DNA of 64,000 bases from Octopus sinensis. Lineage: Eukaryota. The position numbers were made by a program, and so were the translations under genes. Shown piece after piece: positions 7,569 to 64,000 of this stretch; position 1 is the stretch's first letter, and the number at the start of each line of letters is the position of its first letter. The notes under the pieces were generated by a model. It saw only the letters and a program-made list of their open reading frames with translations, did no database searches and was not told the DNA's origin. Location: NCBI RefSeq assembly GCF_006345805.1, contig NC_043012.1:42470001-42534000 (forward strand). Direction: 5' to 3'.

Positions 7569-7684
7569 TTGTGTGTGTGTGTGTGTGTGTAAATATATCT
7601 TTATATATATATATCTTTATATATACATATCTTTATATATATAAACATATATGTCCGAAACTGATTATATGAAACTTACAGTGT

Positions 7685-16948: not shown

Positions 16949-19900
16949 ATGGATTACATTATGTTGGTTGTTTGAATGTGCGCGGCCTGGGAGCAGGCTG
17001 GAAGCAAGGTCGCTTCTTGCATGATATCAGGTCGCGTAATTTAGATGTTATTGTTGCTACAGAAACCCGGTTAGAGGGGCCAAGAGGTCTACTCCCGCTG
17101 TTTGACGGCTACGAGAGTTTTTTCTCTCCTGGCAGTCCTACAGGCGGGAGTGGGGTGTTGGTCCTATTAAAAAGAAACCGGGTTTCTGAGAAAAAGTTAA
17201 TTTTTGCAGATCCAGAAGGTAGGCTGGTCGTCATGGATTTGACGTTCAGTAATGGTAAAGTTATCAGACTGGTTGCAATTTACGCACCCAACCATACAGG
17301 GCAAAGTGATTATTTTCGTGAACTAGAAAACTTTCTTGGTACTTCGCATTCATTAGTGGTGCTAGGAGACTTTAACACAATTTGCAAAGCGGATGTAGAT
17401 TGTGTTGGCTCGCGTCCAGATAGAAAAGGCAACAGTGGCTTCATGGAACTGCTAAGCCGCTTTGAGCTAGCAGATCCTTATAGGCTGGAATTTCCGAACG
17501 CTCCATTGTGGACATGGTCAAACAGCGACGGATCTTCCAGGTCATATTTAGATAGAATACTAATTAGAAAAGTAGACAGTAAAATAGCTAAGTGTCCACA
17601 GTTTTACCCGATCAGCTACAGTGATCATAAAATGGTCACTTGTAAGCTTGACATAGATAAGGTTAAAAATAGAGGATCCGGTTACTGGAAACTTAATACG
17701 TCCCTTTTGGCGATTAAGGAGTACAAAGACCGGATTAGGAATATAATTCAGAGGGCACTATCTGGTACCATCATTAATAACAAATGGTGGTACGCCCTCA
17801 AACGAGCCATCAAGTTTGAGTCTATTAGATATAGCATAGGAGTAGTGGCTAGAGAGGCTAGAAGGGAAACTACTCTAGTTAAGGAATTAGAGGAAGCCAT
17901 GAAAACTGGCTCTGCGGCTCAGGTGGCGTCCAAGAGACTGGTGTTAAACCAGCACCTCGAGGCCAAACACATGGGCTGCATTGTCAGGGCTAGAATCCGC
18001 CATATGGGATGTGAAGGAATCAACGCTGTGAGATGGGCCCGAGTGATGGAAGCTCAGCATGGTAACGATGCCACGATTCGATCTTTGACGAACCAAGGTG
18101 AGTTGATAAACGAACCCGAGGAGATGTGTGAGGCCTTTCAGGAGCACTTCGCTCAGCTTTTCGGTGAGTGCGGCGGACTGGATAGGAGGAGGGCCTTTAC
18201 GGACCTACTCGACGGGCTGCCGCGCTTATCGGGGCGAGATGCGGAGGGCTGTGAAGGGCCAATCACGCTTGAGGAGGTGGTTGAGGCAATGGCGGACTGC
18301 GGCGCGGGCAAGGCGCCGGGTTTGGATGGTCTACCCTATGAGTTATATAAGAGTATGCCAGACTTGTTCGGGCACCTACTGGCGGAGGTCTATGCGAACT
18401 GGCAGCAGAACGGGCTTATACCCAGATCTGTGCGCCGGGGAGTAGTGACTCTCGTCAGACAGGACCCGAGCAAGGGGGAGTGCATTGATAATTTCAGGCC
18501 CATCACTCTGCTAAACACAGAGTTGAAGATTTTGGCCAAAGTGTTATCGAAAAGATTGGCGCGTGTCGCGGATGGTCTGATCGGAGAGGCACAGACATGT
18601 GCCGTTCCGGGCAGATCCATTCAGGATAATCTCCATCTAATGCGGTACACTATAGAGGGGTTTAATAGTGATTCTGGCAAGGGTGGGGCACTGGTCCATT
18701 TAGACCAATCTAAAGCTTTTGATAGGGTCGACCATCGTTACCTGGTATCTGCCCTGGCACAGTTTGGGCTGAGCCTTGGCTTCCTCAGGTGGATTATCCA
18801 AATTTATGATAACATCGACTCGGTAGTTCGGGTGAACGGCTTCTTGTCGAAGCCGTTCAAAATCAAACGCTCGGTTCGTCAAGGGTGTCCGCTCTCCCCG
18901 CTTTTGTACGTGATGGCTCTTGAGCCATTACTGCGAAAACTGAGCGGCATCCCGAGACAGCCAGGTAATGGAAAATCAGTGTCAGCGTACGCGGATGACA
19001 TCACCATCATCGTAACCGAAATGGACCACCTATGTAAAGTAGGCAAGGCCATAGAGGTTTACGAGACGGTGACAGGAGCAAAAGTTAATCGCGAAAAGTC
19101 AGTCGGCTTGCAACTCGGCACCTGGAGAGGCAAGTCGATGCCTCCTGACAGCGTCGTGGGACGTTGGACGGAGGGTCCGATTAAACTGCTAGGGGTCTGG
19201 TTCGGTCCAGACCTCCAAATAGAGAAGAATTGGGGCGAGGTAACGAGCAAGGTGGCTGCAGTAGCCAAGACCTGGTCTTGGCGGTGGCTATCCCTGAAAG
19301 GGAGGGCGGAGGTGGCCAATGTGTTTATCGCATCGGTTATCACCTACCGCCTTTCCGTCGTTCCTTGCCCTGATTCGTGGTTGATCAAGTTGGAAAGACA
19401 GCTCTTCTACTTCTTGTGGAAGGGCGGGAAACCACTTGTGAAACGCTCTACTTGCTGTCAACAACCATGAAAGGGTGGGCTAGGGATGCCTTGGCTGATG
19501 ATGCGCAGACATGCGCTGAGGTTAAGACATCTGTGGCTCTACCTGGATGGTGAACGGGTGTGGTCTTCGCTAGCAAAACTGATGTTTCCCAAGTTCACTA
19601 GTTTCGGTGGATGGGAAACCTGGCTGAATCGTAGATCGAAACTTGGTACTTGGTACACGGAGTGTCGCAAGGCTCTCCTGCTATTCCGTCGCTCGGGCAA
19701 CGCCTGCGGTGGGGGTTCCACCACATTCTTCTATAGAGGGTTGGTAGAGGCGGAATGTGAAGATACCTTGGGGGAAACCCTAGGTCTCGACGATAATCAG
19801 CTGGCCAGTCTGTTCCGACGTACGTTCGAGCCGAGAACACTGGACAACTTCCAGAAGTCTCTGGCATGGCAATGCTACAGAGGAGCTCTACCTGTTCGGG

Positions 19901-20340
19901 ATAAACTCGCAAGGCACGGTGGCCAAGACAGTCCGATATGTCCAAGATGCGGGCGGGATAGGGAAACCGTCCCGCACGCTATTGTTCATTGTCCGGACGT
20001 GTCTGAGGTGTGGGTTTATGCCGAACAGCTGTTGTCAGGTACACGAAGAGTACAGCTGTCGACTGAGTCGATTACAAAAATTGACCCACCGGATTTCCTC
20101 GTGAATGAAGGTAAGTTTCGTTTTCTCGTTGTAGTAGCAATTGCGAAAGAGGTGATATGGAAGACGAGAATGAAAGGTTTACAGTCAGGCAAGTTCATCT
20201 CCGGCCCTGGTTTGATGAATTATTTCATCTTTCACCTGAAAAGGAAGATAGGGCTGGAGAGAATATGCCTGACTAGGAGAGTGTATGAAGAACGATGGAA
20301 GGATGTAGCACGAAAGTTGCGAGTGAAAGATACAACATAA
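16949..20340 (+). pseudogene. Tx1-type ORF2: APE endonuclease, reverse transcriptase, C-terminal CCHC
   Basis: NVRGL, ETR, GDFN, SYLDRIL, SDH; FRPITLLN, DQSKAFDRV, RQGCPLSP, YADD; CPRCGRDRETVPHAIVHC. There is one in-frame TGA at 19468-19470, and the ATG at 16949 is one base out of frame. Confidence 0.92.
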
Positions 20341-26562: not shown

Positions 26563-27919
26563 ACTTAGAATAACTTAGAAAGGTTTTAGCCAGTATTGGT
26601 CCAGGCTATGTCTAACTTAATAGCACCACCTGGTGAAGTTTTTCAATTCAGGATTTGGGCACCAAGGCCCATTCGAGCAGAGAGTTATTGTTTGCGGAGA
26701 CATATCCGGGTGTGGGTGGTTTGTCCAGGACTGTTTGAAGGAATTTGTCCAAAATCTTCTTGAATTTTGTGTAGTCAGTTTCTGTTTTGACGTGTCTTGG
26801 TGTAATGTTGAAGAGAGCGGGTCCAATTGAGGTGAAATAATTGTGCAGTAATGTTGTTATGAGATGCGATTGAGATTTTTGTTGTGGACGGATGGCACGG
26901 GGTCCAAGTCTTGGATGTATTTTGAAGGTGATACCAACATCATTTGGACAGTGCTGATGGAATATTTTCCACATCATACAGATGATGTAGCGTTCACGGC
27001 GTCGTTGGAGTGAATACAGTTTCAGCTTTTCCAGTCGATCCCAGTAGTCGAGGTCTGACATGCCATCTATCTTTTTCGTGATTGACCTTTGGGGAGCTTC
27101 AACTTTCATAATATTTTGTTTTGTGTAGGGAGACCACAGTGGACAGCAGTATTCAAGGTGGGGTCGGGCAAAAGTAGAGAAGAGAAGGATAATAGTGTGG
27201 GAATCTCTCGACTGGAAAGTTCTGAGAATCCAGGAACACATTCTGCGGGCCATGTCAACTTTGCTGCTTATATGTGTAGCCCAGCTTATGTTGTTGTCCA
27301 CAGTTACTCCCAGGTCTCTGATGTTGTTAGACGCCATGAGAGTTTCACCAGAAGGAAGGGAGTATGGGAGTTTCAGAGCGTCCTCCCTTCCAAAGTGGAT
27401 CAATTCGAATTTGTCTTCGTTTAGCAACATGTTGTTCTTTTCCGCCCATTGGACAACAGCCAGTAGGTCTGACTGAAGGTTTATTCGGTCATCCACGCCA
27501 TTGATGACCTTCTGGTGCTTGGAATCATCAGCGAAGATTCTGATGTTACTATATTTGATGATGTCAGTGATGTCATTAATGTAGATGATGAAGAGAAGTG
27601 GGCCCAACACAGTGCCTTGTGGGACACCACTACTGACTTTGGCTGGGCTGGATTTGACTCCTTCGTCTACAACATGTTGGGTTCTGTTAGACAGGAAGCA
27701 CTTGATCCACTGCAGTAGCTTTCCAGTGACACCAATACTGGACAGCTTTCTCAAAAGGATCTTATGATCAACCCTGTCAAAGGCCTTGCTGAAATCAAGG
27801 TAGATAACATCAGTGTTGGAACCCTCTCCCAAGGCTCTCAAAATGTCATAGAAGTGATACAGTAGCTGCGTCAGACAATCCCTTCCATTACGGAATCCAT
27901 GCTGGTTGGAGTTCAGCAT
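26563..27919 (-). mobile_element. 5'-truncated CR1-group LINE with uninterrupted RT and C-terminal ORF (423 aa)
   Basis: QHGFR, YLDFSKAFDRV, GVPQGTVLGPLLF, FADD, RPHLEYCCPLWSP. Short 3' UTR with a TTCTAAGTTA repeat tail. Confidence 0.92.
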
Positions 27920-30829: not shown

Positions 30830-32100
30830 AAAAGCAAAATTCAACACCAATCGCTAAAGAGACTTCTAACAAATGCGAAGCTTTGCACAAAAACCACGAA
30901 GCCAACGGTTAAAAAATATGGACGCCCAAACTGTGGAACATGCCCCAAACTGTGGAAGCCTCAGAATTCATTTTCAAACAAGGAGAAAGATTCACGATTA
31001 AAACCAACTTCACTTGCGCCACTGGGAATCTAATTTATGTTATAACTTCCTCAGGTTGTGGACATAACTATATAGGACAGACAAGTATGACACTGAAACA
31101 GAGAACCACACTACATAAAGAACAGATCCGATTCCCGCAATACAGACAAATTCCTTTGAGGGAACACATAGAGCGATTTGCCGGTAATATTCAACCAAAC
31201 ATCACAATTTTCCCCATCTACCAGTGCAAAGAAACAATTTATATACAAGAACGTCTAAATAAAGAAAATTTATTGATTGAAAAATACAGAACGCGTGTAA
31301 ATATGTACCCATAGCCAACTTTCATTTCATTGTATATTTTAATTCATGATTACATGCCCATCACTGTACATATTTCTCCTCAGTACTTTAGCTTTTGAAT
31401 TATTCTGTATATTTTTCCTTCTCTAAAAGATTAACAATTACCTCCCCTGTCCCCAATGGTAAAGATCACCAATTACCTCTCCTTAGATTTTCCTACTTGT
31501 TGAATCATTCAGTTATAAACTTCTCCCCACACAACATGAACTAAAATCTTAAGAAAATACAAAAGTACAATAATATCAATGTCATGATTAGCGAAAGCGA
31601 AACCGGTCGACTAACACAATATCAAATACATTAAAACTATGTAAAGTGTGTGCATTGTTCTTCGGCTTAACAGCCCTTCTTGTTTGTGTTACTGTTATTC
31701 TCCTTGTCCTGTCTTTTACTGTTTATATTTTGTACAGTCGTTACTGTCCTGTTTTTGTTACCATTTTTACCCCTCCGCAAAAAATCTCAAATTTTATTTA
31801 ATTTGATTTTCGCGGGAAGGATTGCTTCATTAAAGTCATGTATCGCCTTGACCTTCGAAACGTGGAGTAGATGAAACAAAGGCGACTGAAGAAGGGGAAT
31901 TTTCCTTGTTTTGTATGTCCTGTACTCTATTTTTTCGTTGTTTAAGAAAAATGTTCATTTCCTTGGTTTTGTGTTTATGTTTTCGTTTCTCATTGTGTTC
32001 GACGTTTTTTTTTGGTGTCCTGTACCCATATATGCATGTATATATACATGTAGAGGTAGGTACGTACATATATGTATGTATATATGCATATGTTTTTTTT
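30830..32100 (+). mobile_element. Penelope-like element 3' part: Cys linker, GIY-YIG endonuclease (to 31314), terminal repeat
   Basis: LKRLLTNAK...GRPNCGTCP, then FTCATGNLIYVITSSGCGHNYIGQT...KENLLIEKY. Confidence 0.85.
31581..31611 (+). ncRNA. Hammerhead-like motif with A3:U8 in place of C3:G8
   Basis: GUC-AUGAUUA-GC-GAAA-GC-GAAAC-CG-GUC-GAC. Helix I is only 3 bp. Confidence 0.55.
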
Positions 32101-33789: not shown

Positions 33790-34614
33790 TTTCAAACACT
33801 TAATTTTGGGGAGTATTTTTTGATGAAAAGTAGTTCCATTGCCTTTCCAAACTTTGGGTTATCTCTTGAACATTTGTAGAAGGGGAAAGTTTTAAATTTT
33901 TTTCACCGCATTTTTCTAGATACTTGCTCAGTGAAATCTTACGTAGTTCCTCTTGTCGGATTCGCTGTCTGTTCTTGCACGTTGGCAAAGGGAGTTATTT
34001 GTTTCGCCAATATAATTTTCCTTGCAGCTGGGGCAAGTGATACAGTATATAAGATTCTGTGTCTTGCAGTACATATCTGCATTTACTTTCAACTAGAATC
34101 TACTCTTGGATTCTATGTGAGAATCACTTTCTAAATATTTGAAGCTGTTGTTGTTGTTGTTTTGTAGTTGTTGTTGCATACGGAGAATTCTAATTCATTC
34201 TCTGATGTGAATTTTGCCCTTGTGAGGTGTCTTTTAAGATTTTTTAGGTGGCGTTTATTGTTTCGTAAGAGGTTTTCATCAATCAGATTTTTCATTTTAG
34301 GGCTTTGTAGAAGTATTGGTAGGTTTGATTTTGTGGTGTGAAAAATGTTGGTTACTCCAGGATTGTGCATATTGATAAATGGAATCGTGTGTTCTTCAAT
34401 TTTTTGCTTTGGTGTCCTTAGTCGTGTGATGTTCAACTTCATCACCTTTTTGATTCCATCATTTATTAATTCTAAGGAGTAATTCTGTTTTCTTAGGAAG
34501 CCTTTGAGTTCATTAAGTCGGATTTGACGTATTTTGAGGTCAGTTACTAAAGAACAGTAACTTCTTGCCATACTGCATGGGATGTTCCTTTTGATGTGTG
34601 AGGGATTGCAAGAG

Positions 34615-34682: not shown

Positions 34683-34772
34683 ATTCATTGTTGTTTGTTT
34701 TGCTTTCAATAAGTGATATTGTTGACCGCAATATAGAAGACTTACATTTCTTTTATCTTTCTTTGTGCACAG

Positions 34773-34874
34773 TACGTTTCATGTTCCTGGGACCAGACTG
34801 TTCGAGTATGGAAAGCATGGATGAAAAAAGCTCCTAGAACTTTAAACAGAACATTTCAAAATTCAACGATTTAA
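34773..34874 (+). CDS. WD40-repeat protein, exon E (terminal as assembled)
   Basis: TTTGTGCACAG acceptor. Encodes YVSCSWDQTVRVWKAWMKKAPRTLNRTFQNSTI-stop, completing the WD40 repeat begun in exon D. Confidence 0.85.
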   Translation, partial: YVSCSWDQTVRVWKAWMKKAPRTLNRTFQNSTI

Positions 34875-36885: not shown

Positions 36886-37970
36886 TACGTACATCTCAGA
36901 TAAAGGAGATTGAAACCTGAACATTATCCTCAGTAAGCACTTCCGCTAAAAGCAGCTATCAAAGTATATCTCTGCAGATGGTTTATCTCAAGTGTAATAA
37001 ATTGTCCCGTAATTTTCCAGATTCATATTCTTAAGAATATTATTTCTCTTGCACGCATTTTTCCATGTAATACATGTATTTTTCTAGGCTATGCTATTAT
37101 GCTAATTAATAATGTGTTGAATGTGTCAATTAGTGGTGTCACTGGTAATTTTTTCCTTACCTCAATGACGCCGGTGACATATATTAAAAGTCCCCTTTAA
37201 AATAAAAAAGTTAATTATACTTAAATCCAATTTTTTGCCTTATATTGTTTCATGATTTTTTGCATCACAACTTTTTTGATACAATTTTTTATTGCATGGG
37301 ACCAAAACTATGAAATTCTTCATGCTTTCTTCTATCATTGAAGCTAAGATAAATATATCTTGCTTTAAAAATAAGTTATTTAGATCTAAACTTGATTGGT
37401 GACGTTACTTACTCTCCTAAAATGTTGCTACAAATTTTGATATAAACTTTTTTCTACTGGATCCAATCACAATTTTTTATGCCAAGATGTGGCTAGGGAC
37501 CAGTTCTCTTCAAAAATGTTAACAGATTTCAATTTGATTAAGAACTGAATTAGCGACAAGATCTCAAAGATGCTGCATGTGAGTAAATTGCGGCGTTAAG
37601 AATATTATTCAACTACTACCGTAGTTGAATGATAAGATATAGAATACAGAGTAGAGCAAAAGTATCTTTGCATTTCAATAACATAAATAACATTTTAAGG
37701 CGGTGAGTTGGCAGAATCATTATAACGCCGGACAGAATTCATATTAAATCATCGACTAAATACATTAGAACCGACCTACAGTCAGTATATAAATGAACCG
37801 CATGAAATATATGTGGTCGGAAATCGTTTGATAAGGCTGGAAAGAGGTGAAAAGCGATGAAATCGAAGAGTTAAGGAGTTCGTTTATTTTTCACAGTGAA
37901 TATGCACCGAAATATGGATGCTGAAATCACAACGAGAACAAAGACATGATGGAATGGAAGGCGTTTATCT

Positions 37971-38009
<39 letters not shown>

Positions 38010-38109
38010 TACATATACACACACACAAACACACACATATATATGTATATATATATATATATATTTACAAACATATATATGTATATATATATATATGTAT
38101 TTACATATA

Positions 38110-38145
<36 letters not shown>

Positions 38146-38151
<6 letters not shown>

Positions 38152-38470
38152 CAAGACCAACTTCTGTTTCTCCGAGAACCTTATCTACGTTCTCACATGC
38201 GCCGGTTGCCAACATAAATATGCTGGACAAACGAGCCTCCCTTTACGTAAAAGAGTAGCGGTCCATAAAGAACAAATAAATCACCCAGAATACCGTCAGA
38301 TTCCACTAAGTAGCCACATAGACTCATGCGCTAAAGACAAAAATCCCAAATTTTACATATTCCCCTTCTACCAATGTAAAGACGGAATCACCACACAAGA
38401 AAGAATTAACAAGGAGAATCTTTTTATTGAAAAATTCAAAGCGCATCTTAATATGCAATCTCCACGTTAA
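38146..38470 (+). mobile_element. Penelope-like GIY-YIG endonuclease fragment
   Basis: [19 protein letters not shown]...HKEQI...YRQIPLSSHI...KENLFIEKF. Same lineage as 30940-31314. Confidence 0.85.
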
Positions 38471-43018: not shown

Positions 43019-44699
43019 GAGAGAGAGGGAGAGAGGGGGAGTTTACCATGATGAAAACGAAAAATAAAAGAGATAAACAGAGAGATCTTTTCTGTCACAG
43101 ACTGAAATTTTAAAATGAAGCAAAAAGCTTCAAATTTGGTATATTGATGTACTTTTTCACGTTGAATCCGGGTTTGTGATTCATTTATTCCAGAATTTTT
43201 TTTTAATGTCACGGAGGTTTAAAGTTTGATTATTTTTACCCAATCAGAAAACAGGATTTGGAAGTTAATCATAGTGTGCATGAAAAGCTGTGTATCATAA
43301 AATGAAAGTAAAGATTAGAAGACGAAATTTTAAACAAAATGAAAGCAATGCGTGTGAGATAATAAATATTTACAGAGAGAAGGGAAAAGAGTGAAAGAGA
43401 GAGATAGTGTGTGTGTGTGTGCGTACATGTGTGTGTGCGTGCATATGTGTGTGCGTGTATGTGTGTGTGTGTGATAAAGAGTGTGGTAAATAATAGAGAG
43501 TGAGTGACGGTGACAGATAGGAGATTTTTAAATCTAAAACAAATTATATTTTCTACTATTATTTATGGACGATATTCTCATTGGGATGCACATTTCGAAA
43601 ATGAAATCCGTTGTAATAATATTTTACAACACTTGTATTGCTGTTTTCATGATATAATTATGTTTTTCTTCAATAATGTAATTATGTATTCATCCAATAA
43701 TGAGGTTGAGCTGCTGGTTGCAATAATATTCTAAAAACTTTCAGTAATATTTGATATTGTTATGATATACATCTCAGTTTAAGATCAATGGCACTCACGA
43801 CATTGAATACTGTCATTTTTTCCAATCCAATAATGTTATGTGTAAATGTTATATGTATCTGACGATTTGACAGCCTTGACTATGTAATTTGCATTATGTT
43901 GCAAATAATCACCTTATGTCAGTGAAACGTACGTAAGGTAGTGTTACTAAATATCTCATACAATCTCATGATTTCCTTCGCTTTATAAATAATGTTTTAT
44001 AATAATAAAATACAGAAATTATTACACTGACAATGATGAAGTAATAATTTTAACATTTTAAAAATATCTTGATTATGATTCGTTGCGTTTCGATAATTTT
44101 TGACAATGTTTAATAACTCTTTTGGTATTCCTTCAATAATATATTTGGGATTGTTTTGAAAGCGTTTAAAAGAGGCGCAATAATGTTTCAACTTACTTTA
44201 TTACAATTTTGATAAATGTCAGAAAGCTGTAATAAAGATGATGATGATTATGATGATGATGATGATGATGATATATTCATATCTACACAACATTTCGTTC
44301 TGTTTCATTGTCACCTGGTGTCTTATCAATTACTCCTGAAAAATTATAATCTAAATAACAGTAACAACATCACTGACAATAACAACTCATCTCAGACATG
44401 TTGAAGTGTATGATAATGGATTGCATATTATGATAATATTATGATCATCATATGTTATCATAATAATGGATTGAAGATATTCAATATACAATTTTATAAT
44501 TACATTTTTTTAAACTATATTTCTCCTTGTGACATGATGAAAAATGAAAATTAATCATATTTATATTATTCATTTAGGTTTATATATTTTCAAAATATTT
44601 TCATAATGTAACAGTAATAATATCGATATCCCACCTGTCTCCCAAAGCATAAACAAAAATAAACAGGATTTTACCAAGTGTGAAGGTCATTGATACATT

Positions 44700-47600
44700 T
44701 CAACAGCCTATCTTTGAAGCTGTAAGGTTATCGCTCTCAGGAAGTACCGGGTCTTTCATCCAGTCAATTAATCCTTTCACACTGACAATGTATACATCGG
44801 ACAATTCCTCAACCAGTCCCAGGAAAGCGTTTAAACCTTTGAGGTTTTCTTCGTTGTTCGGTAAAAACCAGTCCGATCGTAAGCGAACACCAAAAGGCGT
44901 TCGATCTCTTTTGTAAAATGCCATGAAATTACTTAGAAGGAGATCATAGGTTTGCACCGCAGTCTGGGGTTTGTTATAGCAACTGTCAACAAATTTACAC
45001 AAATACCTTTTCTTAATTCCAACATAAGGAACAGCAGGGACTTCCCAGAGACCCTTAAATTTTTTAGTAGGACACTGTTGTAGCAAGCAGTTTTTCTTCC
45101 ATCCAAAGTCTAAGGTAGACGGCCAAATTCCTGTCCTATTCTCTAAATTTGTCATTACAAACAGTGACGAATCATACAGCATCTTACTATTTTGCAAATT
45201 TTCAAATTGAACGTCTCCTTTCGATTGAAGATCAATATTTCTCCAGCCAAATATTTTGTCATGAGATACATTAGCATATCGGTTAAGCAAATATTTTTGC
45301 AAAGCAATTTCCATATTTAAAAGATTACCGGCCAGATTCTTCTTTTTTAACCCATGTAATGCAATTTCCATTCCTTCGTCGTAAAGCTCTTTAATAGCGG
45401 TATAATTAGATCCTTCGGATGTGACAAATAAGGTGCTTTTAATCCGGCAACCATTTGCATTTAACCTTTCGGCATGAAAAAGCCCTTTAAGTTTTTCAGT
45501 AATAGAAGAATTGATAGATCCTTCGTAAGTGAAATAAACGAATTGAGGAATTTTCTTCGATGTTGTTGGGATATGGAATTGGTGACATTGACAACCTGGT
45601 TTATAGCAGTTCTTCCCTTGTTGACAGGATTCCGAAACTGATACATTGCTGTCGTCATTTGATTTCGAAGGACTGCTGTTGCTGCTACTACTATTACTAA
45701 GTTCCAAATGTTCATCCAGTGGGTCTGACGAAAATTCTCGAGATTTCACAAAGCCTGGTAATAAAGCGGATTTTGTATATCTACTTGTAAGAATATTTCG
45801 CTGACCTACACTTTTATTTTTATATCTGTTATTAATATTTATTCCAGTAGTAAAATCCAAGAAAGTTTTTCTTAAATCAGAGTATTTTGTTTTTAAATAT
45901 TGTCCCCTTTCTAATGGAAGAATTTCGGCCTTTTTAGATAAAATAGCTTCTTTTTTCGGTGAAAGTATTTTAACTGTTTCTGATGATGGAATTTCTAATT
46001 TTTCAAATGGACGAATTTTGGTTATTTTAGATTTCAATAAATTTCTCATTGTTGTCATCGGTTTCACGTTTAACTCCTTCAAACCGTTTTCATAGTCCAA
46101 CTTCTGCTGTCTGTTGTGGATTAATATTACCGGCTCACGGTAATCCTTGTTTGTAAGAAGTTGCCTGTCTATCGAATTATTCTTTGCAACTAATATCACA
46201 GCGCTATCGTGGTTAGACGAATCTTTCGTAATTATCTTCTCTAGCTCCTTATCATTTTTCATTACCAGGCTGGCCGCTACTCGGAATAAGTTTGATTTTC
46301 TATGAAAAACACTTTGAAGTGAATGTCTACTAGTGTCAATATTACTTTGGTCATTTTCATTTCTATTGTGTATGTTCATGTTAGAATTGCTTTGAATAGG
46401 TAAGCTTCTTGTTTTCTTGATATCTGAATTTTCCTCGGCTGCGCTTCTCTCAGAAAAAACTTCAGGGAATTCGAATTTGTCCCTTTTATTACTTTTCAGT
46501 GACCGTTTATGGAGAATATTAGTTGGTACAGAATCAGAGGTCTGATAGGAAGTTCTCAACGTCACAGAAGACTCATTCAGTGGAGTCAGTGTCGTCTGAG
46601 AAATATTTTGTAATTTATTTCGACTGGCTGTATTCGAAGGTGACAGTGTCGAGTGAATTAATTCTCTTGTTGAATTGAAACTATTACCGATAGGCTGGGT
46701 TTGAGATGGTGTTGACTGAAAATTATATCCTTCCGTTACAAAATTATTAGAAACTTGTTGGGTTTGCAGCGATTGTAACCTTGCGCTCGGGTCATTGTTA
46801 TTGTTCCCTTCCATGTTTTGTGACATCATCACGTTTGTAGTGATTTCTCCCATCAAGACTGTTGTTGCTAGTTTCGTTGACGAAATCGTTTCTACAGAAA
46901 CTATGGTTTGGTTTGGGAAACTGGAAGATTGGTTTATGGAACTGGTGGTTTGATTTGGGAAACTGGAATATTGGTTTGTGGAACTGGTGGTTTGATTTGG
47001 GAAACTGGAATATTGGTTTATGGAACTGGTGGTTTGATTTGGGAAACTGGAATATTGGTTTGTGGAACTGGTGGTTTGATTTGGGAACTGGAATATTGGT
47101 TTGTGGAACTGGTGGTTTGATTGGGAAACTGGAATATTGGTTATGGAACTGGTGGTTTGATTTGGGAAACTGGAAGATTGGTTTATGGAACTGGTGGTTT
47201 GATTTGGGAAACTGGAATATGGTTTATGGAACTGGTGGTTTGATTGGGAAACTGGAATATTGGTTATGGAACTGGTGGTTTGATTTGGGAAACTGGAATA
47301 TTGGTTTGTGGAACTGGTGGTTTGATTTGGGAAACTGGAATATTGGTTTATGGAACTGGTGGTTTGATTTGGGAAACTGGAAGATTGGTTTATGGAACTG
47401 GTGGTTTGATTTGGGAAACTGGAATATTGGTTTATGGAACTGGTGGTTTGATTTGGGAAACTGGAATATTGGCTTATGGAACTGGTGGTTTGATTTGGGG
47501 AGTTGTTTGTTTGTTTTGGCGAAATGGTGGTTCCGTTTAGGTAACCGTTGGTTTGGTTCTGACATTGAAACGGAGCAAATTTGGACAACTCATTTAACGA

Positions 47601-48590
47601 TGGTTGGTGCTTCATCCATTCCACAATCTGTTTAATATTAACAACATAAACGTCATTGAGGCCGAGGATATAGTCTAAAAATCGATGCATGGCTTTCATT
47701 CGGTATGGGTTCGTCTCATATTCTTGCAACAACCATGTTGAATGCATGTTCAAGCCAAATGGTGCCTTGTTCATAGTGTAGTAACTCATGAAATTTTCCA
47801 GCAAGAAATTGAATGATTCTTCTTCGTTTGTTGGTGAATTCGCACATCCGTCCACATAGACGCAAGGATAACGAGCCAGTTTGTCAAGCACTGTCACGAT
47901 AGGTACTTCCCAGAATCCTTGAATATTTTCGGTCGGACATTCGGGAATGCTGCAAGGATATGGCCAACCATAATCCATCGTAAATGGAACTGGGGATTCT
48001 TCAATCAGTGACCTTTTGGTGATAGTCAAAGTTGAATCGTAGGCAAAACCTGCCTTACTCAGTATTTCAAACTGTTCGTTTCCGTAAGCTATTAAATACG
48101 GACTTCTGAATCCGACAATTTCTTCTTTGGGTATCTGCGATCGATTGGCAAGGTTTAACCGTTGACCAAGTGCTTCGTATGAAAACTGAAGAGCATTCAG
48201 TGATCTTATATGATTGATGCCATGCACTGCTATATCCATTCCTTGGTCATAGAACTGCTTCACCAAGTCGTAATCGGTATCGTTATGCGACACGAACAAA
48301 GTCATCGAAATTGGGCACTTATTTGGATTTGTGCGGCTTTTATTGAATAATTCTTCATAAAGAGGAGAATTTCGAACTGTCACTGCATCGTCGAACGAGA
48401 AGTAAACCAACTGAGGCCTTTGTGACTTTTTACCGGGGATTGTATGGCCACAGCAGGAGCAGTTTGGCAGAGTGCAGTGACCCGTTGTTCTACATTTATT
48501 GCATTCGTTTGGTGTAGTGCGTATGTTGGCGAGGACGATAGAAGCAGAAAAGATTGCCAATGACAAGACGAAAAAGAATGGGAAGTTCAT
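44700..48590 (-). CDS. Secreted tandem CE4 (chitin deacetylase-like) protein, 1296 aa, intronless CDS
   Basis: Hydrophobic N-terminal signal. Domain 1 (aa ~30-343) has SFDD, HGINH, RSPY, DST and FGLNMH. Domain 2 (aa 989-1296) is homologous but has TYEG, HGLKK, RNID and FGVRLR. A pyrimidine-rich acceptor-like site lies just 5' of the ATG. Confidence 0.92.
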   Translation of the reverse strand: MNFPFFFVLSLAIFSASIVLANIRTTPNECNKCRTTGHCTLPNCSCCGHTIPGKKSQRPQLVYFSFDDAVTVRNSPLYEELFNKSRTNPNKCPISMTLFVSHNDTDYDLVKQFYDQGMDIAVHGINHIRSLNALQFSYEALGQRLNLANRSQIPKEEIVGFRSPYLIAYGNEQFEILSKAGFAYDSTLTITKRSLIEESPVPFTMDYGWPYPCSIPECPTENIQGFWEVPIVTVLDKLARYPCVYVDGCANSPTNEEESFNFLLENFMSYYTMNKAPFGLNMHSTWLLQEYETNPYRMKAMHRFLDYILGLNDVYVVNIKQIVEWMKHQPSLNELSKFAPFQCQNQTNGYLNGTTISPKQTNNSPNQTTSSISQYSSFPNQTTSSINQYSSFPNQTTSSINQSSSFPNQTTSSINQYSSFPNQTTSSTNQYSSFPNQTTSSITNIPVSQSNHQFHKPYSSFPNQTTSSINQSSSFPNQTTSSITNIPVSQSNHQFHKPIFQFPNQTTSSTNQYSSFPNQTTSSINQYSSFPNQTTSSTNQYSSFPNQTTSSINQSSSFPNQTIVSVETISSTKLATTVLMGEITTNVMMSQNMEGNNNNDPSARLQSLQTQQVSNNFVTEGYNFQSTPSQTQPIGNSFNSTRELIHSTLSPSNTASRNKLQNISQTTLTPLNESSVTLRTSYQTSDSVPTNILHKRSLKSNKRDKFEFPEVFSERSAAEENSDIKKTRSLPIQSNSNMNIHNRNENDQSNIDTSRHSLQSVFHRKSNLFRVAASLVMKNDKELEKIITKDSSNHDSAVILVAKNNSIDRQLLTNKDYREPVILIHNRQQKLDYENGLKELNVKPMTTMRNLLKSKITKIRPFEKLEIPSSETVKILSPKKEAILSKKAEILPLERGQYLKTKYSDLRKTFLDFTTGININNRYKNKSVGQRNILTSRYTKSALLPGFVKSREFSSDPLDEHLELSNSSSSNSSPSKSNDDSNVSVSESCQQGKNCYKPGCQCHQFHIPTTSKKIPQFVYFTYEGSINSSITEKLKGLFHAERLNANGCRIKSTLFVTSEGSNYTAIKELYDEGMEIALHGLKKKNLAGNLLNMEIALQKYLLNRYANVSHDKIFGWRNIDLQSKGDVQFENLQNSKMLYDSSLFVMTNLENRTGIWPSTLDFGWKKNCLLQQCPTKKFKGLWEVPAVPYVGIKKRYLCKFVDSCYNKPQTAVQTYDLLLSNFMAFYKRDRTPFGVRLRSDWFLPNNEENLKGLNAFLGLVEELSDVYIVSVKGLIDWMKDPVLPESDNLTASKIGC
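46911..47500 (-). repeat. Coding tandem repeat, 14-15 copies of 42 bp (SSFPNQTTSSINQY)
   Basis: Direct reading. Six single-base deletions lie in two clusters of three. Confidence 0.95.
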
Positions 48591-48724
48591 AATGATTGCT
48601 TAGACAGTTATCAAAGAAAACAGAGCGAGCGAGGACGGTAAGATATTATTATTGTTGTTGTCGCTGTTGTTGATGATGACAAGGATGATGACGTGCCTTG
48701 TTTACGGTTTTCTTAGTTGTTGTT

Positions 48725-48755
<31 letters not shown>

Positions 48756-51013: not shown

Positions 51014-52440
51014 CGGGAAGCTTTATGAAAATAAACAAAAGACGAAGGCAGGTGGAATACAAACAAACAATTGTATTAGTATGGCGCTCAGGAATAGAAA
51101 TAAAACAAGTCTTTTACGTTTCGAGCCTACGCTCTTCAACAGAAAGATACACAGAAAAGAAACACGGAGAGAAACAAGGAGAGAAAAAAATGCGTGCAGA
51201 AGCTAGCGAATCAACATGGCGATCTGATTCCGGCCATAAGTCAAAGATCAAACGTGAGACGCAAGAGCGAAAATAGGGGAGATAACAGGGTCAAATGACC
51301 ACGCCCCAACATAAGGGTGTGTGTGTGTGTATGAGAGAGTATGTAGTGCGTATGAGAGGTCTGGACGTGTGTATGTATGTATGATGTGATGTGTAATGTC
51401 GTATGGTGTAGTGTCGAGAGAGGAGATGAGGGGGAGAGGGGAGGAGAGGGGAGGAGATATGGGGAGGTAAGGGGGAGAGAGAGGAGAGGAGAGATGAGGG
51501 GTGGGAGAGGGGGGTGGGAGAGAGGAAGAAAGGAAGGAGGAAGATAGGAAGAGGGGGGAAGGAGGAAGATAGGAAGAGGGGGGAAGGAGGAGGGGAAGAG
51601 GAGGGGAAAAGGAAAAAGGAGAAGAGGAGGGAGAAGGGGTAAAGGTGAGAGTGATGAGGGGGAGAGGGGGAGATGAGGGGAGGGGGGAGATGATATGAGG
51701 GGGAGGGGGAGGGAGAATGAAAGAGAAGAGGAGGGGAGGGGTAGGAGGGAGAATGAAAGAGGAGAGGAGGGGAGGGGTAGGAGGGAGAATGAAAGAGGAG
51801 AAGAGGAGGGGGAGGGGGAGGAGGGAGAATGAAAGAGGAGAAGAGGAGGGGGAGGGGATGGAGGAGAGAGAGGGGGAGAGAGAAGTGGAGTGAGGGAGCA
51901 GAGAGAAAGAGGGAAGGGGAAGAGGGAAGAAGAAAGAGGGAAGAGGAGGGAAAGAGAGTAGGGGATGAAGGACTGAAGAGAAGTAGGGGTCGGCGGGGAG
52001 GTTAGATGAGGAGGGGGAGAGGGGGGTTAGATGAGGAGGAGGGAGAGTTGAGACCAAATGGCGTAAAAGAGCGAAGAGAGAAGATTAATTCCTGTTCACG
52101 GCGCAAACGGGAATCCGGATGGCCTCTCTGCAAGGACAAACCGAACACAGGTGTTGCAAGGAGTGACCGGTGGAGCGGAAATGGCGTGAGACCGGTGTGT
52201 CGTTGGCAAGGCGGATGTCACGGAGGTGTTCCGCGAACCGGTCAGCCAAGCGGCGTCCCGTTTGTCCGATGTACAGGGAATGGCAGAGAGAGCAAGAGAT
52301 GCAATAGATGATATTGCTGGAGGTGCAGGTGAAGGGGTTGATGATGCGATAGGGTCGATGATGGGTGCCAGTGAGGAGGGTGGTGTTGGAGAGGTAAGGG
52401 CAAGTGCGGCAACGTGTAGTCCGGCATGGTGGAATAGTGA
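51012..52440 (-). mobile_element. Penelope-like element 3' part: GIY-YIG, CT-rich tract, terminal repeat
   Basis: PCRTTRCRTCP...FTCTSSNIIYCISCSLCHSLYIGQTGRRLADRFAEHLRDI...PVSRHF. Confidence 0.88.
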
Positions 52441-53008
52441 AAAAAAAGGAGAGGAAAAAAGGAGAAAAAAAAAAGGGGAGAAAAAAAGGGGAAAGAAACA
52501 AACGTTCGAAAAAAACAACAAAAAAAACAATCGTATATATAAGGATAAGGGAAATTTTAGAAGGAACACATTCAGGCAGTTCAATAGGAATTGCTAGTGC
52601 TCCGCCATTTGGAAATGGATCGGATAGATGTAAATTGTGTATTGGAGAATGGTATCTAATTCTGAAATTATTTAATGCTGAACAAATTTTCAGATGTGAT
52701 TCCTTCATCTACTCATAAGTTCTATTCAACATTTCTAAGGACACATAGCACTAGACCTATTCTATGTTTCTATGTAAATCTATTAAAACTTATCTTATTA
52801 ACACTTGACTGTCTTTACCGTGAATTTTAGATCCTTCCATTCTAGCCAGCACATTATCACTTACATATGAATAATAATAATATGCCTATAAGTTCTATTC
52901 ACCATTTCCAAGAACACATAGAATTAGATTCGTTTACTAAATCTATTAAAACTTCTCTCATTACTATTTGAAATATGAAATTTAGATCTTTCTAGTCTTG
53001 CTTTGTAG

Positions 53009-61809: not shown

Positions 61810-64000
61810 TGATTTTTCCAGTTTCAGCTAATGAGCTGTGGCCATGCTGGGGCACCGCCATTTGGTTTGCTACATGATTTTACCTCACGAATGCTTTTCA
61901 GCAACTGCCATTTGGTGCATGAGTTCGATGCAGCTGCCCTCATCTGCCCCTCCTGCCGTGAAGTTGGTTCATCCGGGACACCTGACAGGAAGAGATCCAG
62001 TCCTACTTTAAAGACATCCGCATCTACACCATACAGGTCCCTCAGGTTCTTCGGGAGGATATTGAAGAGCTGTGGGCCTCTGAAGCCCAGGCTATCACAG
62101 TATCTTGTCCTACATCTTGATGGCAAATTTGGAGTCCTTGGTACTACCCAGTGGCGCCCGGTTCTGGCATTTGTGTGACTCTCGATGCCAAAGTTTGGGA
62201 CAAGTCCTTCCAGGATCTTCCAGATATATATTATGGCATATCTTTCTTGCCTACGCTCCAGGGAATAGAGCTTTAATCTCTTGAGTCTTTCCCAGTAGCT
62301 TATATGCTACACAGAGGCTATCTTCGTGTAGCTTCGTTGGATCGCCTCAAGTTCTGTGATCAACTTGACACTGGATGGTGACCATAGCTGAGAGCAATAG
62401 TCAAAGTGGCTTAGGACAAGTGTCTTCCAGAGGACCATCATGGTTTCTTGTTCTCTTGTTCTAAAGGTTCTAAGAATCCATCCGGCCAGCCGTCTACATT
62501 TCATTGCCAGTTTAGCAACATGTACATGAAAGGTCGCGTCATCACTCATGTGAATATCCAAGTCACGCACTGATTGTGCCTCTGGGATTGCAATTCCTCC
62601 GGGTCCAGTGTATTCATTGGGTATTGCATTCAGTTTTGCATGCTGATAGCATAAAGCTTGAAACTTTTCAGCATTGAACTGCATGCTATTCTTTTCGGCC
62701 CACTTGTATATTTTGTCCAGCTCACATTGCAGGTGCTTAGTGTCTTCAGGGTTCTGTATTGCCTGTGAAACTTTTGTATCATCTGCATAACTTGTGATCG
62801 TGGCTCTCTGCGTGGCTGAGGGCATGTCTGAGAGGTCCATTATGAACAGTAGTGGTCCCAAAACAGTGCCCTGCGGAACACCGCTCACTATTTGCGTGTT
62901 AATGGCTGCTACCACCTGACTTCTATTCTTCAGAAAGTCATGAAGCCATTCTCCAAATTTTCCAACTATGCCAAGATCACGCAGTTTGTGACATATCATT
63001 CCATGATCGACTTTATCAAAGGCCTTTGCAAAGTCGAGATATATGACTTCCACATTTGAGTGGTTGAGCAGTCGTTTCAGCACCCAGTCATAGTGTTGTA
63101 GGAGCTGAGTTAAGCAGCTTCTTGCTGGTCGGAAACCATGTTGGGTGTCAGGCAGCAAGTCATTTTCTTCAAGGAAGGTGATTAGTTTCCTTCTGACTAT
63201 TCGTTCCATGACCTTGCTGATGTGTGAGGTGAGAGAGATAGGTCTGTACTTCTTGGCCTCCGCTCTGCTACCTCCTTTATGAATAGGGCATATTTTACCT
63301 TCCTTCAGTTTTCTTGGAAGTTTGCCAGTTGCAAGGAAGCTCTGAAAGAGAGACCGCAGTGGTCTTGCTAGGACTCTCTTACATACTTTTAGAAGGATTG
63401 CTGGGAATCCATCGGGGCCAGTAGCTGAGTTTGTTTTCATCTCATCTATAGCCTTTATTACATCGTCTTCCTTTATATTGATGTAATCAATCATCGCCGC
63501 CTCTGACCCCATATCTGCAGTGGTGAAGAAGTCAGTTGGATTGCTGATTTGGAAATGCCCAAGGGGTGGGGTGAAAACACTCTTGAATTGCTCATTTAGT
63601 ATTTCACTTACCCTCATTGGATTTCTTGTGAGTGTGCCATCCCTTTCAAGGAGTGGCCCTATCCTACAGTGCACCGTAGCTGTTTCTTTGGCATACCTGT
63701 AGAAAGCTCTGGGGTTAGATTTTATGTTGTCTATAGCCCAGGCTTCTTTGTCTGCTCTTTCCTTTTCATGGGAGAGTTGCAGACAGTTTTCAATTTCCAA
63801 CAGTTTCATTTTCAGGCGGGACTTTTCAGTGCTTTCCATTTGTTTGTTTAGGCGATTTGAGATTTTTGTGCGCCGTCTCATTAGAATTTTCCTCTCTCTG
63901 GGGATTTTGTTCTTGTGTACAGTGGCCTTTCTCTCTGGGACACATTTGTAGCATATGGCTTACATTACAGACATGAATTGTTGAAGTTTCATGTCCATAT
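61810..64000 (-). mobile_element. CR1-group LINE, ORF2 with RT and 3' end, continuing beyond the window
   Basis: YRPISLTS, QHGFR, YLDFAKAFDKV, GVPQGTVLGPLLF, YADD. An in-frame TAG at 62307-62309 is followed by the same frame to 61824; another stop lies near 63960. Confidence 0.93.

What the first reader, a model, noticed from the sequence alone, without database searches (positions are those of the whole stretch)
44700..48590. Double chitin-deacetylase-like protein: one motif-intact domain plus one pseudo-enzyme domain on a long glycosylated spacer
Seen: signal peptide and domain 1 with all CE4 motifs (D67 D68, H123, H127, RSPY, H283). A ~640-aa S/T/N/Q-rich linker carries 13 in-repeat NQT sequons and dibasic sites (HKRS, NKRD). 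Domain 2 keeps the cysteines and core motifs but lacks the Asp pair, the second His, PY and the motif-5 His. The CDS is intronless in a locus with otherwise long introns. Established: the CE4 Asp-His-His metal triad is required for deacetylation. Inference: domain 2 may be a chitin-binding or scaffold module, or be released by convertase cleavage, in a chitinous structure such as beak, radula or sucker cuticle.
Basis: partly seen in the sequence, partly recalled or inferred. Interest (0 to 1): 0.7.

Follow-up and report, generated by a model that had tools for sequence, protein, structure and literature searches.

The report
Octopus chitin deacetylase with dead twin domain
This is a real, single-exon octopus gene for a secreted protein that joins a working-looking chitin deacetylase domain to a catalytically dead copy through a long sugar-coated spacer; the same layout is conserved across molluscs but its function has never been studied.

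Summary
Window 44700-48590 (-) is one 1296-aa ORF in Octopus sinensis chromosome CM016874.1 (LOC118766574).

- **Domain 1** keeps every CE4 catalytic motif and matches Bombyx chitin deacetylase BmCDA8 (E = 1.6e-54).
- **Domain 2** has the same fold (AlphaFold pTM 0.87; TM 0.82 to BmCDA8). It lacks the metal-binding Asp, the second His, the Pro-Tyr of motif 3 and the motif-5 His.
- **The linker** carries 13 NQT sequons.

New here: this is a pan-molluscan family, not an octopus oddity. About 43 of 73 homologues, from cephalopods, bivalves and gastropods, share intact N domain, variable spacer (73-1018 aa) and degenerate C domain. All C domains form one clade (99/100 bootstrap) and share the Asp-to-Gly switch. 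The coding sequence is intronless in every genome checked.

Domain 2 is under purifying selection as strong as domain 1 (omega 0.06-0.12 against 0.08-0.10; linker 0.42-0.72).

Furin-type sites are not enriched in the family. No fixed packing of the two domains is predicted. An abalone shell-matrix proteome already lists a "NodB (2x)" chitin-deacetylase-like protein.

Best reading: a matrix chitin deacetylase tethered to a non-catalytic chitin- or chitosan-binding domain. That binding role is inferred, not shown.

The parts
44700..48590 (-). Complete single-exon CDS, 1296 aa plus stop. It corresponds to O. sinensis LOC118766574 at CM016874.1 42514700-42518590.
   Evidence: ORF listing and translation; locus identity.
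48528..48590 (-). Probable signal peptide (aa 1-21, MNFPFFFVLSLAIFSASIVLA).
   Evidence: Mean hydropathy is 2.03 and no other hydrophobic stretch exists. The homologue model shows an N-terminal helix followed by a low-confidence break. The abalone relative is annotated with a secretion signal. Inference only; no SignalP run.
47562..48512 (-). Domain 1 (aa 27-343): CE4/NodB chitin deacetylase domain with an intact Asp-His-His metal triad, catalytic base, motif-3 Arg and motif-5 His.
   Evidence: PF01522 above cut-off; 5Z34 E = 1.6e-54; motif table; omega 0.08-0.10.
48387..48392 (-). D67-D68 (motif 1: catalytic base and Zn ligand).
   Evidence: residue roles from PMC6463723.
48210..48224 (-). 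H123-G-I-N-H127 (motif 2: two Zn-binding His).
47742..47744 (-). H283 (motif 5 His).
45627..47561 (-). Linker (aa 344-988): Cys-free, S/N/T/Q-rich, 25 N-glycosylation sequons, fast-evolving.
   Evidence: Composition and sequon counts. Omega is 0.42-0.72. Only 7% of positions are invariant in four octopods. The equivalent linker in the Pecten homologue model has pLDDT about 30.
46904..47499 (-). 42-bp (14-aa, FPNQTTSSINQYSS) tandem array, 14.3 copies at 95% identity, carrying the 13 NQT sequons. It is lineage-specific.
   Evidence: TRF. Absent from orthologues P0002, P0003 and P0005, and largely skipped in NCBI's model.
46500..46511 (-). H694-K-R-S697 dibasic site. It aligns with RRKR-S and RHKR-N in more distant octopod orthologues.
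   Evidence: Suggestive only; not a family-wide feature.
44703..45626 (-). Domain 2 (aa 989-1296): CDA-fold pseudo-enzyme domain with no metal site; disulfide cysteines and fold core retained.
   Evidence: 5Z34 E = 2.4e-40. AF2 pLDDT 84 and pTM 0.87. Foldseek TM 0.82 to 5Z34. Omega 0.06-0.12. Clade-wide loss pattern.
45519..45524 (-). E1023-G1024 in place of the Asp pair. The Gly at the metal-ligand position is shared by 90% of molluscan C domains.
45342..45356 (-). H1079-G-L-K-K1083 in place of H-x-x-x-H.
44877..44879 (-). R1238 in place of the motif-5 His.

Best explanation
The gene encodes a secreted extracellular-matrix enzyme of a pan-molluscan family. Its layout is signal peptide, catalytically competent CE4 chitin deacetylase domain (D1), long disordered and heavily glycosylated spacer, then a second CDA-fold domain (D2).

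D2 lost its zinc site and acid catalyst once, before cephalopods, bivalves and gastropods diverged. It has been kept under strong purifying selection ever since.

The most likely mechanism has three parts.
1. D2 no longer deacetylates. It still uses the remains of the substrate cleft (motif-3 Arg, TLD motif, motif-4 Asp, conserved Trp and Tyr) to hold chitin or partly deacetylated chitin.
2. In this way D2 anchors the protein in a chitinous matrix.
3. D1, on its flexible tether, deacetylates chains within reach.

D2 would thus do the job that the CBM14 chitin-binding domain does in arthropod CDAs, a domain these molluscan proteins lack.

What is shown: gene integrity, domain identities, loss of catalytic residues, the age and monophyly of D2, purifying selection, a disordered linker, and the absence of CBM14.

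What is inferred: secretion, D1 activity, D2 binding to chitin or chitosan, and the tissue. In shelled relatives the protein is in the shell matrix. In octopus a chitinous structure such as beak, radula, stylet, sucker lining or gut cuticle is a guess.
For: **Real, complete gene.** The ORF is intact, and it is a single ORF in the genomic contig of another octopod. The CDS is also single-exon in O. bimaculoides, Mytilus and Haliotis.

**D1.** It is intact.

**D2.** It has the BmCDA8 fold. Metal and acid residues are lost, with D68->G in 90% of C domains and H123, H127 and H283 unconstrained. All Cys, R1117, T-L-D and D1202 are kept.

**Single origin.** The C domains are monophyletic in 99 of 100 bootstraps.

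**Selection.** D2 omega is 0.12 and 0.06, with CIs far below 1 and below the linker.

**Linker.** It varies from 73 to 1018 aa and is often Thr/Pro mucin-like. It is disordered in the model, and pTM of 0.48 means no fixed D1-D2 interface.

**No other binding module.** Neither the window protein nor the molluscan two-domain hits have CBM14 or another Pfam domain. The arthropod Cda5 hits carry PF01607.

**Matrix localisation of relatives.**
- An abalone 'NodB (2x)' protein with a signal peptide is in nacre and prismatic layers (PMC6003135).
- Chitin deacetylase isoform B, as named in the Hyriopsis cumingii record, was detected in Unio pictorum shell (PMC6542584).

**Precedent.** The insect enzyme BmCDA1 needs a chitin-binding accessory protein for activity (PMC6463723).
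Against: - No binding or activity data exist for any family member.
- Almost no positions became newly conserved in D2 (only Q991, N994 and W1156), so nothing marks a new binding site.
- Several cleft positions conserved in D1 are unconstrained in D2 (Y78, P210, Y211, F226). The BmCDA8 +1 and +2 subsite residues Q125 and S241 align with A1087 and K1199. The old cleft may therefore not bind sugar as before.
- The catalytic-base position is still Asp in most C domains, which a pure lectin would not need.
- Tissue expression in octopus is unknown.
- The two-domain AF2 model used a shallow alignment of 14 sequences, so a missing predicted interface is weak evidence.
Confidence: 0.55

Rival explanations
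1. Polyprotein precursor. The spacer is cut by a proprotein convertase, and D1 and D2 act as separate matrix proteins, as the shell protein Pif is cut into Pif97 and Pif80.
For: H694-K-R-S aligns with RRKR-S and RHKR-N in the other octopod orthologues, inside a linker that is otherwise only 7% invariant. Cleavage of Pif into two functional proteins is a molluscan precedent (bioRxiv 10.1101/2021.07.10.451900).
Against: Furin-type sites are not enriched in the family: 8 observed against about 19 expected, and 36 of 43 members have none. The O. sinensis site lacks the P4 Arg. Keeping the two domains in one intronless ORF for over 500 million years, with linkers as short as 73 aa, suggests the physical link matters.
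Confidence: 0.13
2. D2 is not a sugar binder. It is a protein-interaction or regulatory module. It might dock onto other matrix proteins or mineral, or transiently regulate D1, as many pseudo-enzymes regulate their active paralogues.
For: Purifying selection is strong even though cleft residues are unconstrained. In the octopus protein D1 is acidic (pI 5.6) and D2 basic (pI 8.9), so they are electrostatically complementary. Relatives sit in protein-rich shell matrix.
Against: Family-wide the charge difference is weak (26 of 41 pairs, p = 0.03). No D1-D2 interface is predicted (pTM 0.48). No new conserved surface patch is evident from sequence.
Confidence: 0.2
3. D2 is still an enzyme, with a metal-independent mechanism or another substrate, as the NodB-fold allantoinase PuuE works without the Asp pair and second His.
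For: Among the fold matches is PuuE 3CL6 (TM 0.60). PuuE lacks both motif-1 Asp and the second His yet is active (PMC10967932). D2 keeps the motif-4 Asp invariantly, the motif-3 Arg, and in most species the first Asp.
Against: PuuE relies on the motif-5 His, and in D2 that position is unconstrained (R, K, H, S, T, Q). The base position is E, N, S or T in several lineages. No alternative catalytic residue has become conserved.
Confidence: 0.08
4. Annotation or assembly artefact: two neighbouring CDA genes are read through as one ORF, or the repeat array is an assembly error.
For: NCBI's model skips 540 nt of the repeat. The repeat number may be unreliable in a short-read-polished assembly.
Against: The ORF is 3.9 kb with no stop, and D2 has no start codon or signal peptide of its own. 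The same N-linker-C arrangement occurs in a single ORF in more than 40 proteins from three molluscan classes and several independent assemblies. Only the repeat copy number, not the architecture, is in doubt.
Confidence: 0.03

Closest known systems
Insect group V chitin deacetylases (Bombyx mori BmCDA8, PDB 5Z34; also the BmCDA1 catalytic domain, 5ZNS)
   Same: These are the best sequence and fold matches for both domains. They share the N-terminal Cys-rich segment, the (beta/alpha)7 NodB barrel with its loop insertion, and motifs 1-5. D1 keeps every catalytic residue.
   Different: The insect enzymes have a single domain. The molluscan domains end about 50 residues earlier than BmCDA8, so they lack part of its C-terminal loops. 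D2 lacks the Zn triad.
Arthropod group IV CDA (Cda5): CBM14 chitin-binding domain + long Ser/Thr-rich linker + CDA domain
   Same: The logic is the same: a binding module, a long low-complexity glycosylated linker and a catalytic CDA domain. These are the closest non-molluscan hits to the full protein.
   Different: The order is reversed, with the binder N-terminal. The binder there is a peritrophin-A (PF01607) domain, not a dead CDA domain. The molluscan family has no PF01607.
Molluscan shell-matrix 'chitin deacetylase' proteins (Haliotis laevigata idb_6290 'SSP; NodB (2x)'; Hyriopsis cumingii CDA isoforms A/B; Lottia Lotgi1|181237)
   Same: For Haliotis this is almost certainly the same family. 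The proteome table lists a signal peptide and two NodB domains. Haliotis genome homologues P0030, P0031 and P0034 have the intact-N / degenerate-C pattern.
   Different: These are only listed in tables and have not been analysed. No paper notes that the second domain is catalytically dead. They are shell proteins, whereas octopus has no shell. I could not inspect the Hyriopsis or Lottia sequences themselves.
Stand-alone CE4 pseudo-enzymes (bacterial BA0330/BA0331, BA3943, Ba0150; microsporidian EcCDA 2VYO)
   Same: They have the NodB fold with lost catalytic or metal residues and retained structural roles in a polysaccharide wall (PMC4505593; PMC10967932). BA3943 appears among the fold matches.
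   Different: They are separate proteins, not fused to an active paralogue. They are only distantly related in sequence (10-12% identity).
PgaB (E. coli PNAG deacetylase): N-terminal CE4 domain + C-terminal non-catalytic barrel that binds the polymer
   Same: It works alike: a catalytic CE4 domain depends on a second, non-catalytic carbohydrate-binding barrel in the same chain. This rests on my own knowledge and on papers cited in PMC6463723.
   Different: The PgaB C-domain is glycoside-hydrolase-like, not a CE4 duplicate. The two domains pack tightly, with no long linker. It is bacterial and periplasmic.
Multi-domain GH18 chitinases and chitinase-like lectins of insects and mammals (own knowledge, not tested here)
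   Same: They offer a precedent in chitin biology for duplicated catalytic domains, some of which lose the catalytic residue yet persist as binding modules.
   Different: They belong to a different fold and enzyme class.

Membership tests
CE4 / NodB chitin deacetylase (catalytically competent): domain 1 | NodB homology domain recognised by the family profile | tested here: met
   PF01522 scores 34.2 bits against a cut-off of 23.1 over aa 55-182. 5Z34 E = 1.6e-54.
CE4 / NodB chitin deacetylase (catalytically competent): domain 1 | Motif 1 (T/S)FDD: catalytic base and metal-binding Asp | tested here: met
   S65-F-D67-D68.
CE4 / NodB chitin deacetylase (catalytically competent): domain 1 | Motif 2 H(S/T)xxH: two metal-binding His | tested here: met
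   H123-G-I-N-H127. Both His are present, with Gly in place of Ser/Thr, as in the mite-type hits P0057 and P0058 (HGITH).
CE4 / NodB chitin deacetylase (catalytically competent): domain 1 | Motif 3 RxPY and motif 5 His | tested here: met
   R162-S-P-Y165 and N-M-H283.
CE4 / NodB chitin deacetylase (catalytically competent): domain 1 | Measured de-N-acetylation of chitin or chito-oligomers | not testable with these tools
   This needs recombinant protein. Note that BmCDA1 has all motifs yet is inactive alone (PMC6463723).
CE4 / NodB chitin deacetylase (catalytically competent): domain 2 | NodB / insect-CDA fold | tested here: met
   AF2 pLDDT 84 and pTM 0.87. Foldseek 5Z34 E = 5.8e-24, TM 0.82.
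CE4 / NodB chitin deacetylase (catalytically competent): domain 2 | Asp-His-His metal triad | tested here: not met
   G1024 replaces the Asp ligand, K1083 replaces the second His, and only H1079 remains. Clade-wide, G is present in 90% of sequences and both His positions are unconstrained.
CE4 / NodB chitin deacetylase (catalytically competent): domain 2 | Catalytic base Asp (motif 1) and catalytic acid His (motif 5) | tested here: not met
   E1023 and R1238.
Molluscan two-domain CDA-like family (defined here from the data) | N-terminal intact CDA domain + low-complexity spacer + C-terminal CDA domain with xx(D/E)G and no HxxxH | tested here: met
   The window protein fits. So do 42 further hits and most of the 25 multi-domain representatives. 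All named members are molluscs.
Molluscan two-domain CDA-like family (defined here from the data) | The C-terminal domain belongs to the single C-domain clade | tested here: met
   NJ tree: all 43 C domains, including the window's, fall on one side of a split in 99 of 100 bootstraps.
Molluscan two-domain CDA-like family (defined here from the data) | Single-exon coding sequence | tested here: met
   Window; another octopod; O. bimaculoides paralogue, Mytilus and Haliotis.
Arthropod CDA groups I-IV | Chitin-binding peritrophin-A domain (CBM14), with or without an LDLa domain | tested here: not met
   The Pfam scan at E <= 1 finds only PF01522 and a spurious zinc-finger match.
Convertase-processed matrix polyprotein (Pif-like logic) | Conserved R-x-[KR]-R cleavage site between the modules | tested here: inconclusive
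   A site aligns in the 4 octopod orthologues, but O. sinensis has LHKR. The motif is not enriched across the family. Cleavage itself cannot be tested here.

The most novel reading that the evidence does not exclude
The dead C-terminal domain is a previously unrecognised class of chitin/chitosan-reading lectin, a 'CDA-lectin' invented once in the molluscan stem lineage. The tethered enzyme-pseudo-enzyme pair would work as a ruler or processivity device. D2 would dock on the polymer, perhaps on already deacetylated stretches now that its acetyl and metal pocket is gone. The species-specific spacer length would then set how far D1 can reach. Together they would write a defined deacetylation pattern that helps organise shell, beak, radula and other molluscan chitin composites.
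Probability: 0.2. Interest if true: 0.7.

Novelty: new variant of a known kind. Interest (0 to 1): 0.45.

Why it matters
Chitin is the organic scaffold of mollusc shells, radulae, beaks and pens, and its degree and pattern of deacetylation control stiffness, hydration and protein or mineral binding. How molluscs control this is almost unknown.

This analysis shows that the main insect-like CDA family in molluscs is built as an enzyme fused to a conserved dead copy of itself. That arrangement has persisted for more than half a billion years under strong selection.

It gives biomineralisation and biomaterials researchers a concrete, testable module: D2 as a candidate new chitin- or chitosan-binding domain, and the spacer as a tunable tether. 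It also adds a clear animal example to the short list of CE4 pseudo-enzymes.

For genome annotation, it shows that the current 'uncharacterized protein' models can be named, and that NCBI's repeat-skipping model for this gene is probably too short.

Tried and rejected
1. **Furin or convertase site as a family feature.** Counted R-x-[KR]-R in 43 linkers against shuffles. Not enriched, so rejected as a general mechanism and kept only as an octopod-specific possibility.

2. **Fixed intramolecular D1-D2 pairing.** The AF2 model of the short-linker Pecten member gave pTM 0.48 with a disordered linker. Not supported.

3. **Charge complementarity or a basic D2 as a family signature.** Only a weak trend.

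4. **A conserved element hidden in the linker.** No 12-aa window is at least 50% invariant among the four octopods. Pfam finds nothing.

5. **A recent retrogene origin for the intronless state.** Rejected, because intronless CDSs occur across the family.

6. **NCBI's 540-nt gap as a true intron.** No canonical splice sites at any equivalent placement.

7. **A second CDA copy or tandem paralogue in the window.** None found, although another octopod has one about 8.7 kb upstream.

8. **A second word-index homologue search with D2 alone.** It returned one irrelevant hit. It was replaced by the exhaustive profile search.

9. **First NJ/bootstrap script.** It timed out and was rewritten.

10. **Literature searches.** I searched for cephalopod beak, radula, pen, cuttlebone, Nautilus and argonaut CDA, for an oyster CDA gene family, for 'pseudoenzyme', and for the LOC identifiers. 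Nothing was specific.

ORF scanning showed no recognisable exons, so I dropped it.

12. **Contigs L002/L003 as transcript evidence.** Their ends fall in microsatellites that are also present in the window flanks, so they may be genomic. Only L005-L007 look like mRNA assemblies.

Full report
**1. What is at the coordinates**

Window 44700-48590 on the minus strand is a single open reading frame of 1296 codons plus stop. The window is a stretch of the Octopus sinensis assembly GCA_006345805.1, chromosome CM016874.1. The gene lies at 42,514,700-42,518,590 and is annotated as uncharacterized LOC118766574.

NCBI's protein (P0001, 1116 aa) is identical to the ORF except for an in-frame 540-nt gap. 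That gap lies wholly inside a 42-bp tandem repeat. None of its 27 equivalent placements has GT-AG or GC-AG ends. It is therefore a difference in repeat number or an alignment artefact, not an intron.

The rest of the window is dominated by retroelement ORFs and microsatellites. No second CDA copy is present.

**2.

- *N-terminus.* The first 21 residues are strongly hydrophobic, and nothing else in the protein looks like a membrane span.
- *Domain 1 (aa 27-343).*
  - It passes the Pfam threshold for PF01522.
  - It matches the Bombyx enzymes BmCDA8 and BmCDA1 at E = 1.6e-54 and 3.3e-51.
  - It has D67-D68, H123/H127, R162-S-P-Y165 and H283.
  - The BmCDA structure paper assigns these residues as catalytic base, Zn ligands, base-stabilising Arg and motif-5 His (PMC6463723).
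- *Linker (about 640 aa).* It has no Cys and is S/N/T/Q-rich. It holds 25 of the protein's 36 N-x-S/T sequons. Thirteen of these are NQT, inside the 14.3-copy repeat. It also contains HKRS and NKRD.
- *Domain 2 (aa 989-1296).*
  - It is 34% identical to domain 1 and matches BmCDA8 at E = 2.4e-40.
  - It has E-G for D-D, K for the second His, N-I-D for S-P-Y and R for the motif-5 His.
  - An AlphaFold model built on 20 C-domain sequences is confident (pLDDT 84, pTM 0.87).
  - The model superposes on BmCDA8 with TM 0.82.

**3. It is a family, not a one-off**

Of 73 homologues of the full protein, about 43 have the same layout. They come from cephalopods, from bivalves and from gastropods.
- Bivalves include Mytilus, Pecten, Mizuhopecten, Sinanodonta, Potamilus, Ruditapes, Mercenaria and Saccostrea.
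- Gastropods include Haliotis, Babylonia, Nucella, Elysia and Plakobranchus.

In every one the N domain has xFDD / HxxxH / RSP(F/Y) / xMH. The C domain has xx(D/E)G, no His pair, and usually no motif-5 His.

An exhaustive profile search of 1.84 billion representatives with the C-domain alignment found about 40 representative clusters with two or more CDA stretches. Most of the 25 new ones show the same pattern. All that carry a species name are molluscs (Tegillarca, Dreissena, Potamilus, Saccostrea, Babylonia, Haliotis, Ostrea).

Tandem CDA domains also exist in a centipede, a hairworm and Hydra. There the domains are adjacent and have other motif patterns, so these look like independent events.

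A neighbour-joining tree puts all 43 C domains in one clade in 99 of 100 bootstraps. That clade is separate from the N domains and from the arthropod and nematode CDAs. One duplication, and one loss of the metal site (D->G, shared by 90% of C domains), therefore predate the split of the three classes.

The coding sequence is a single exon in the window, in another octopod's genomic contig, in the O. bimaculoides paralogue, in Mytilus and in Haliotis. The intronless state is thus ancestral.

Octopods have at least three paralogues:
- the window gene;
- P0013;
- a form with both domains degenerate (P0095), which lies just upstream of the ortholog in another octopod.

**4. Domain 2 is constrained**

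I used codon alignments of four octopod orthologues and the Nei-Gojobori method with bootstrap confidence intervals.

| Region | O. sinensis vs closest species | More distant pair |
|---|---|---|
| D1 | 0.084 (0.05-0.14) | 0.096 |
| Linker | 0.42 (0.30-0.60) | 0.72 |
| D2 | 0.12 (0.07-0.21) | 0.056 |

No bootstrap replicate gave a D2 omega at or above the linker value or above 1.

Site by site, D2 has lost constraint exactly at the metal and acid positions and at a few cleft positions. It keeps all disulfide cysteines, the G-W-R of motif 3, T-L-D, the motif-4 Asp and the core Trp residues. Almost nothing new has become conserved.

**5. The spacer**

Across the family it ranges from 73 to 1018 residues. 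It may be Thr/Pro mucin-like, Q/K/R-rich or S/N/T-rich. Among the four octopods only 7% of its positions are invariant, against 59-68% in the domains, and no conserved block exists.

In an AlphaFold model of a 746-aa Pecten member, both domains are confident and the linker has pLDDT of about 30. Overall pTM is 0.48, so no fixed inter-domain packing is predicted.

The 42-bp repeat with the 13 NQT sequons is missing from the other three octopod orthologues. It is a recent lineage-specific expansion.

**6. Convertase idea**

R-x-[KR]-R sites are not enriched in family linkers: 8 seen against about 19 expected, and 36 of 43 proteins have none.

Within the octopod orthologues, LHKR-S / LHKR-S / RRKR-S / RHKR-N align. 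This is suggestive but short, and the O. sinensis site lacks the P4 Arg. Cleavage stays possible for octopods, and Pif is a molluscan precedent. It is not the explanation for the architecture.

**7. Mechanism**

The best-supported picture is two independent modules on a flexible, glycosylated tether, secreted into a chitinous matrix. D1 is the deacetylase. D2 is a non-catalytic domain retained for binding.

I favour binding to chitin or chitosan for four reasons:
- D2 keeps the fold and much of the cleft.
- These proteins lack the CBM14 domain that arthropod CDAs use.
- An insect CDA needs a chitin-binding partner for activity.
- Relatives are physically present in chitin-containing shell matrix.

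This step is inference. The rivals are a protein-docking or regulatory role, a released fragment, and a metal-independent enzyme like PuuE. They are listed with their tests in the rival explanations.

**8. Known or new**

The sequences are in public databases as 'uncharacterized' or 'NodB homology domain-containing' proteins. A few are named 'chitin deacetylase isoform B' after a Hyriopsis entry. One abalone shell proteome table lists 'NodB (2x)' (PMC6003135).

I found no paper in the searchable library that describes the family, its age, or the dead second domain. Subscription journals are largely outside that library, so an earlier description cannot be excluded.

CE4 pseudo-enzymes are known as stand-alone proteins. 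An active CE4 domain fused to its own dead duplicate appears to be a new variant.

**9. Verdict**

This is a real and well-observed feature. The specific function, the processing and the tissue remain open.

It is an ordinary gene in genomic terms, but a moderately interesting and readily testable protein family for chitin-matrix biology.

Noticed in passing
window 46959-47498 (within repeat array 46904-47499): NCBI's model for LOC118766574 leaves out 540 nt (180 aa) of the tandem repeat although the genome ORF is open. No GT-AG or GC-AG exists at any of the 27 equivalent placements. The annotated protein is probably too short, or the repeat number differs between the genome and RNA samples.
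   Followed up: yes
L004:1-1271 (ENA ctg108615l, another octopod), about 8.7 kb upstream of the ortholog: A second two-domain paralogue (P0095, 1245 aa) sits in tandem on the same strand. Both of its domains are degenerate (LFDD / PRYNY / QAQY and TFSG / NGLTD / RNPN). No counterpart lies within this 64-kb window.
   Followed up: partly
window 16972-20340 (+), 26648-27919 (-), 62307-63881 (-), 7651-8259 (+): Long ORFs with endonuclease and reverse-transcriptase features (LINE-like retroelements). The window is largely repeat-derived, with many microsatellite-encoded pseudo-ORFs.
   Followed up: no
window 30940-31314 (+), 37946-38470 (+), 52085-52708 (-), 33928-34092 (-): Several short ORFs share a 'C..C...YIGQT...R...H' motif reminiscent of GIY-YIG endonuclease domains, as in Penelope-like retroelements.
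   Followed up: no
window about 34700-34874 (+) and lower coordinates: The assembly's annotation places the end of an 826-aa WD40-repeat gene here. Its exons are not evident from ORF scanning.
   Followed up: partly
proteins P0004, P0075, P0089, P0096, P0100/P0212, P0087: Other multi-CDA-domain architectures exist. P0004 has four domains with mixed intact and degenerate motifs. An unnamed ENA protein (P0075) has four intact domains. Strigamia has two adjacent intact domains. Hydra has a degenerate first and intact second domain. A Gordionus protein also has two, and Ostrea edulis has an adjacent pair. CDA domain duplication followed by partial inactivation has therefore happened repeatedly in animals.
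   Followed up: partly
window 44237-44272 and 48716-48755: (GAT)12 and (GTT)13 microsatellites flank the gene, about 430-460 nt downstream of the stop and 126-165 nt upstream of the ATG. Short-read contigs of the sister species (L002/L003) break at the corresponding repeats. Candidate AATAAA signals lie about 500 and 590 nt after the stop.
   Followed up: partly
window protein D1 vs D2: In the octopus protein D1 is acidic (pI 5.6, about -9 at pH 8) and D2 basic (pI 8.9, about +7). Across the family the difference is only a weak trend (26 of 41 pairs).
   Followed up: yes
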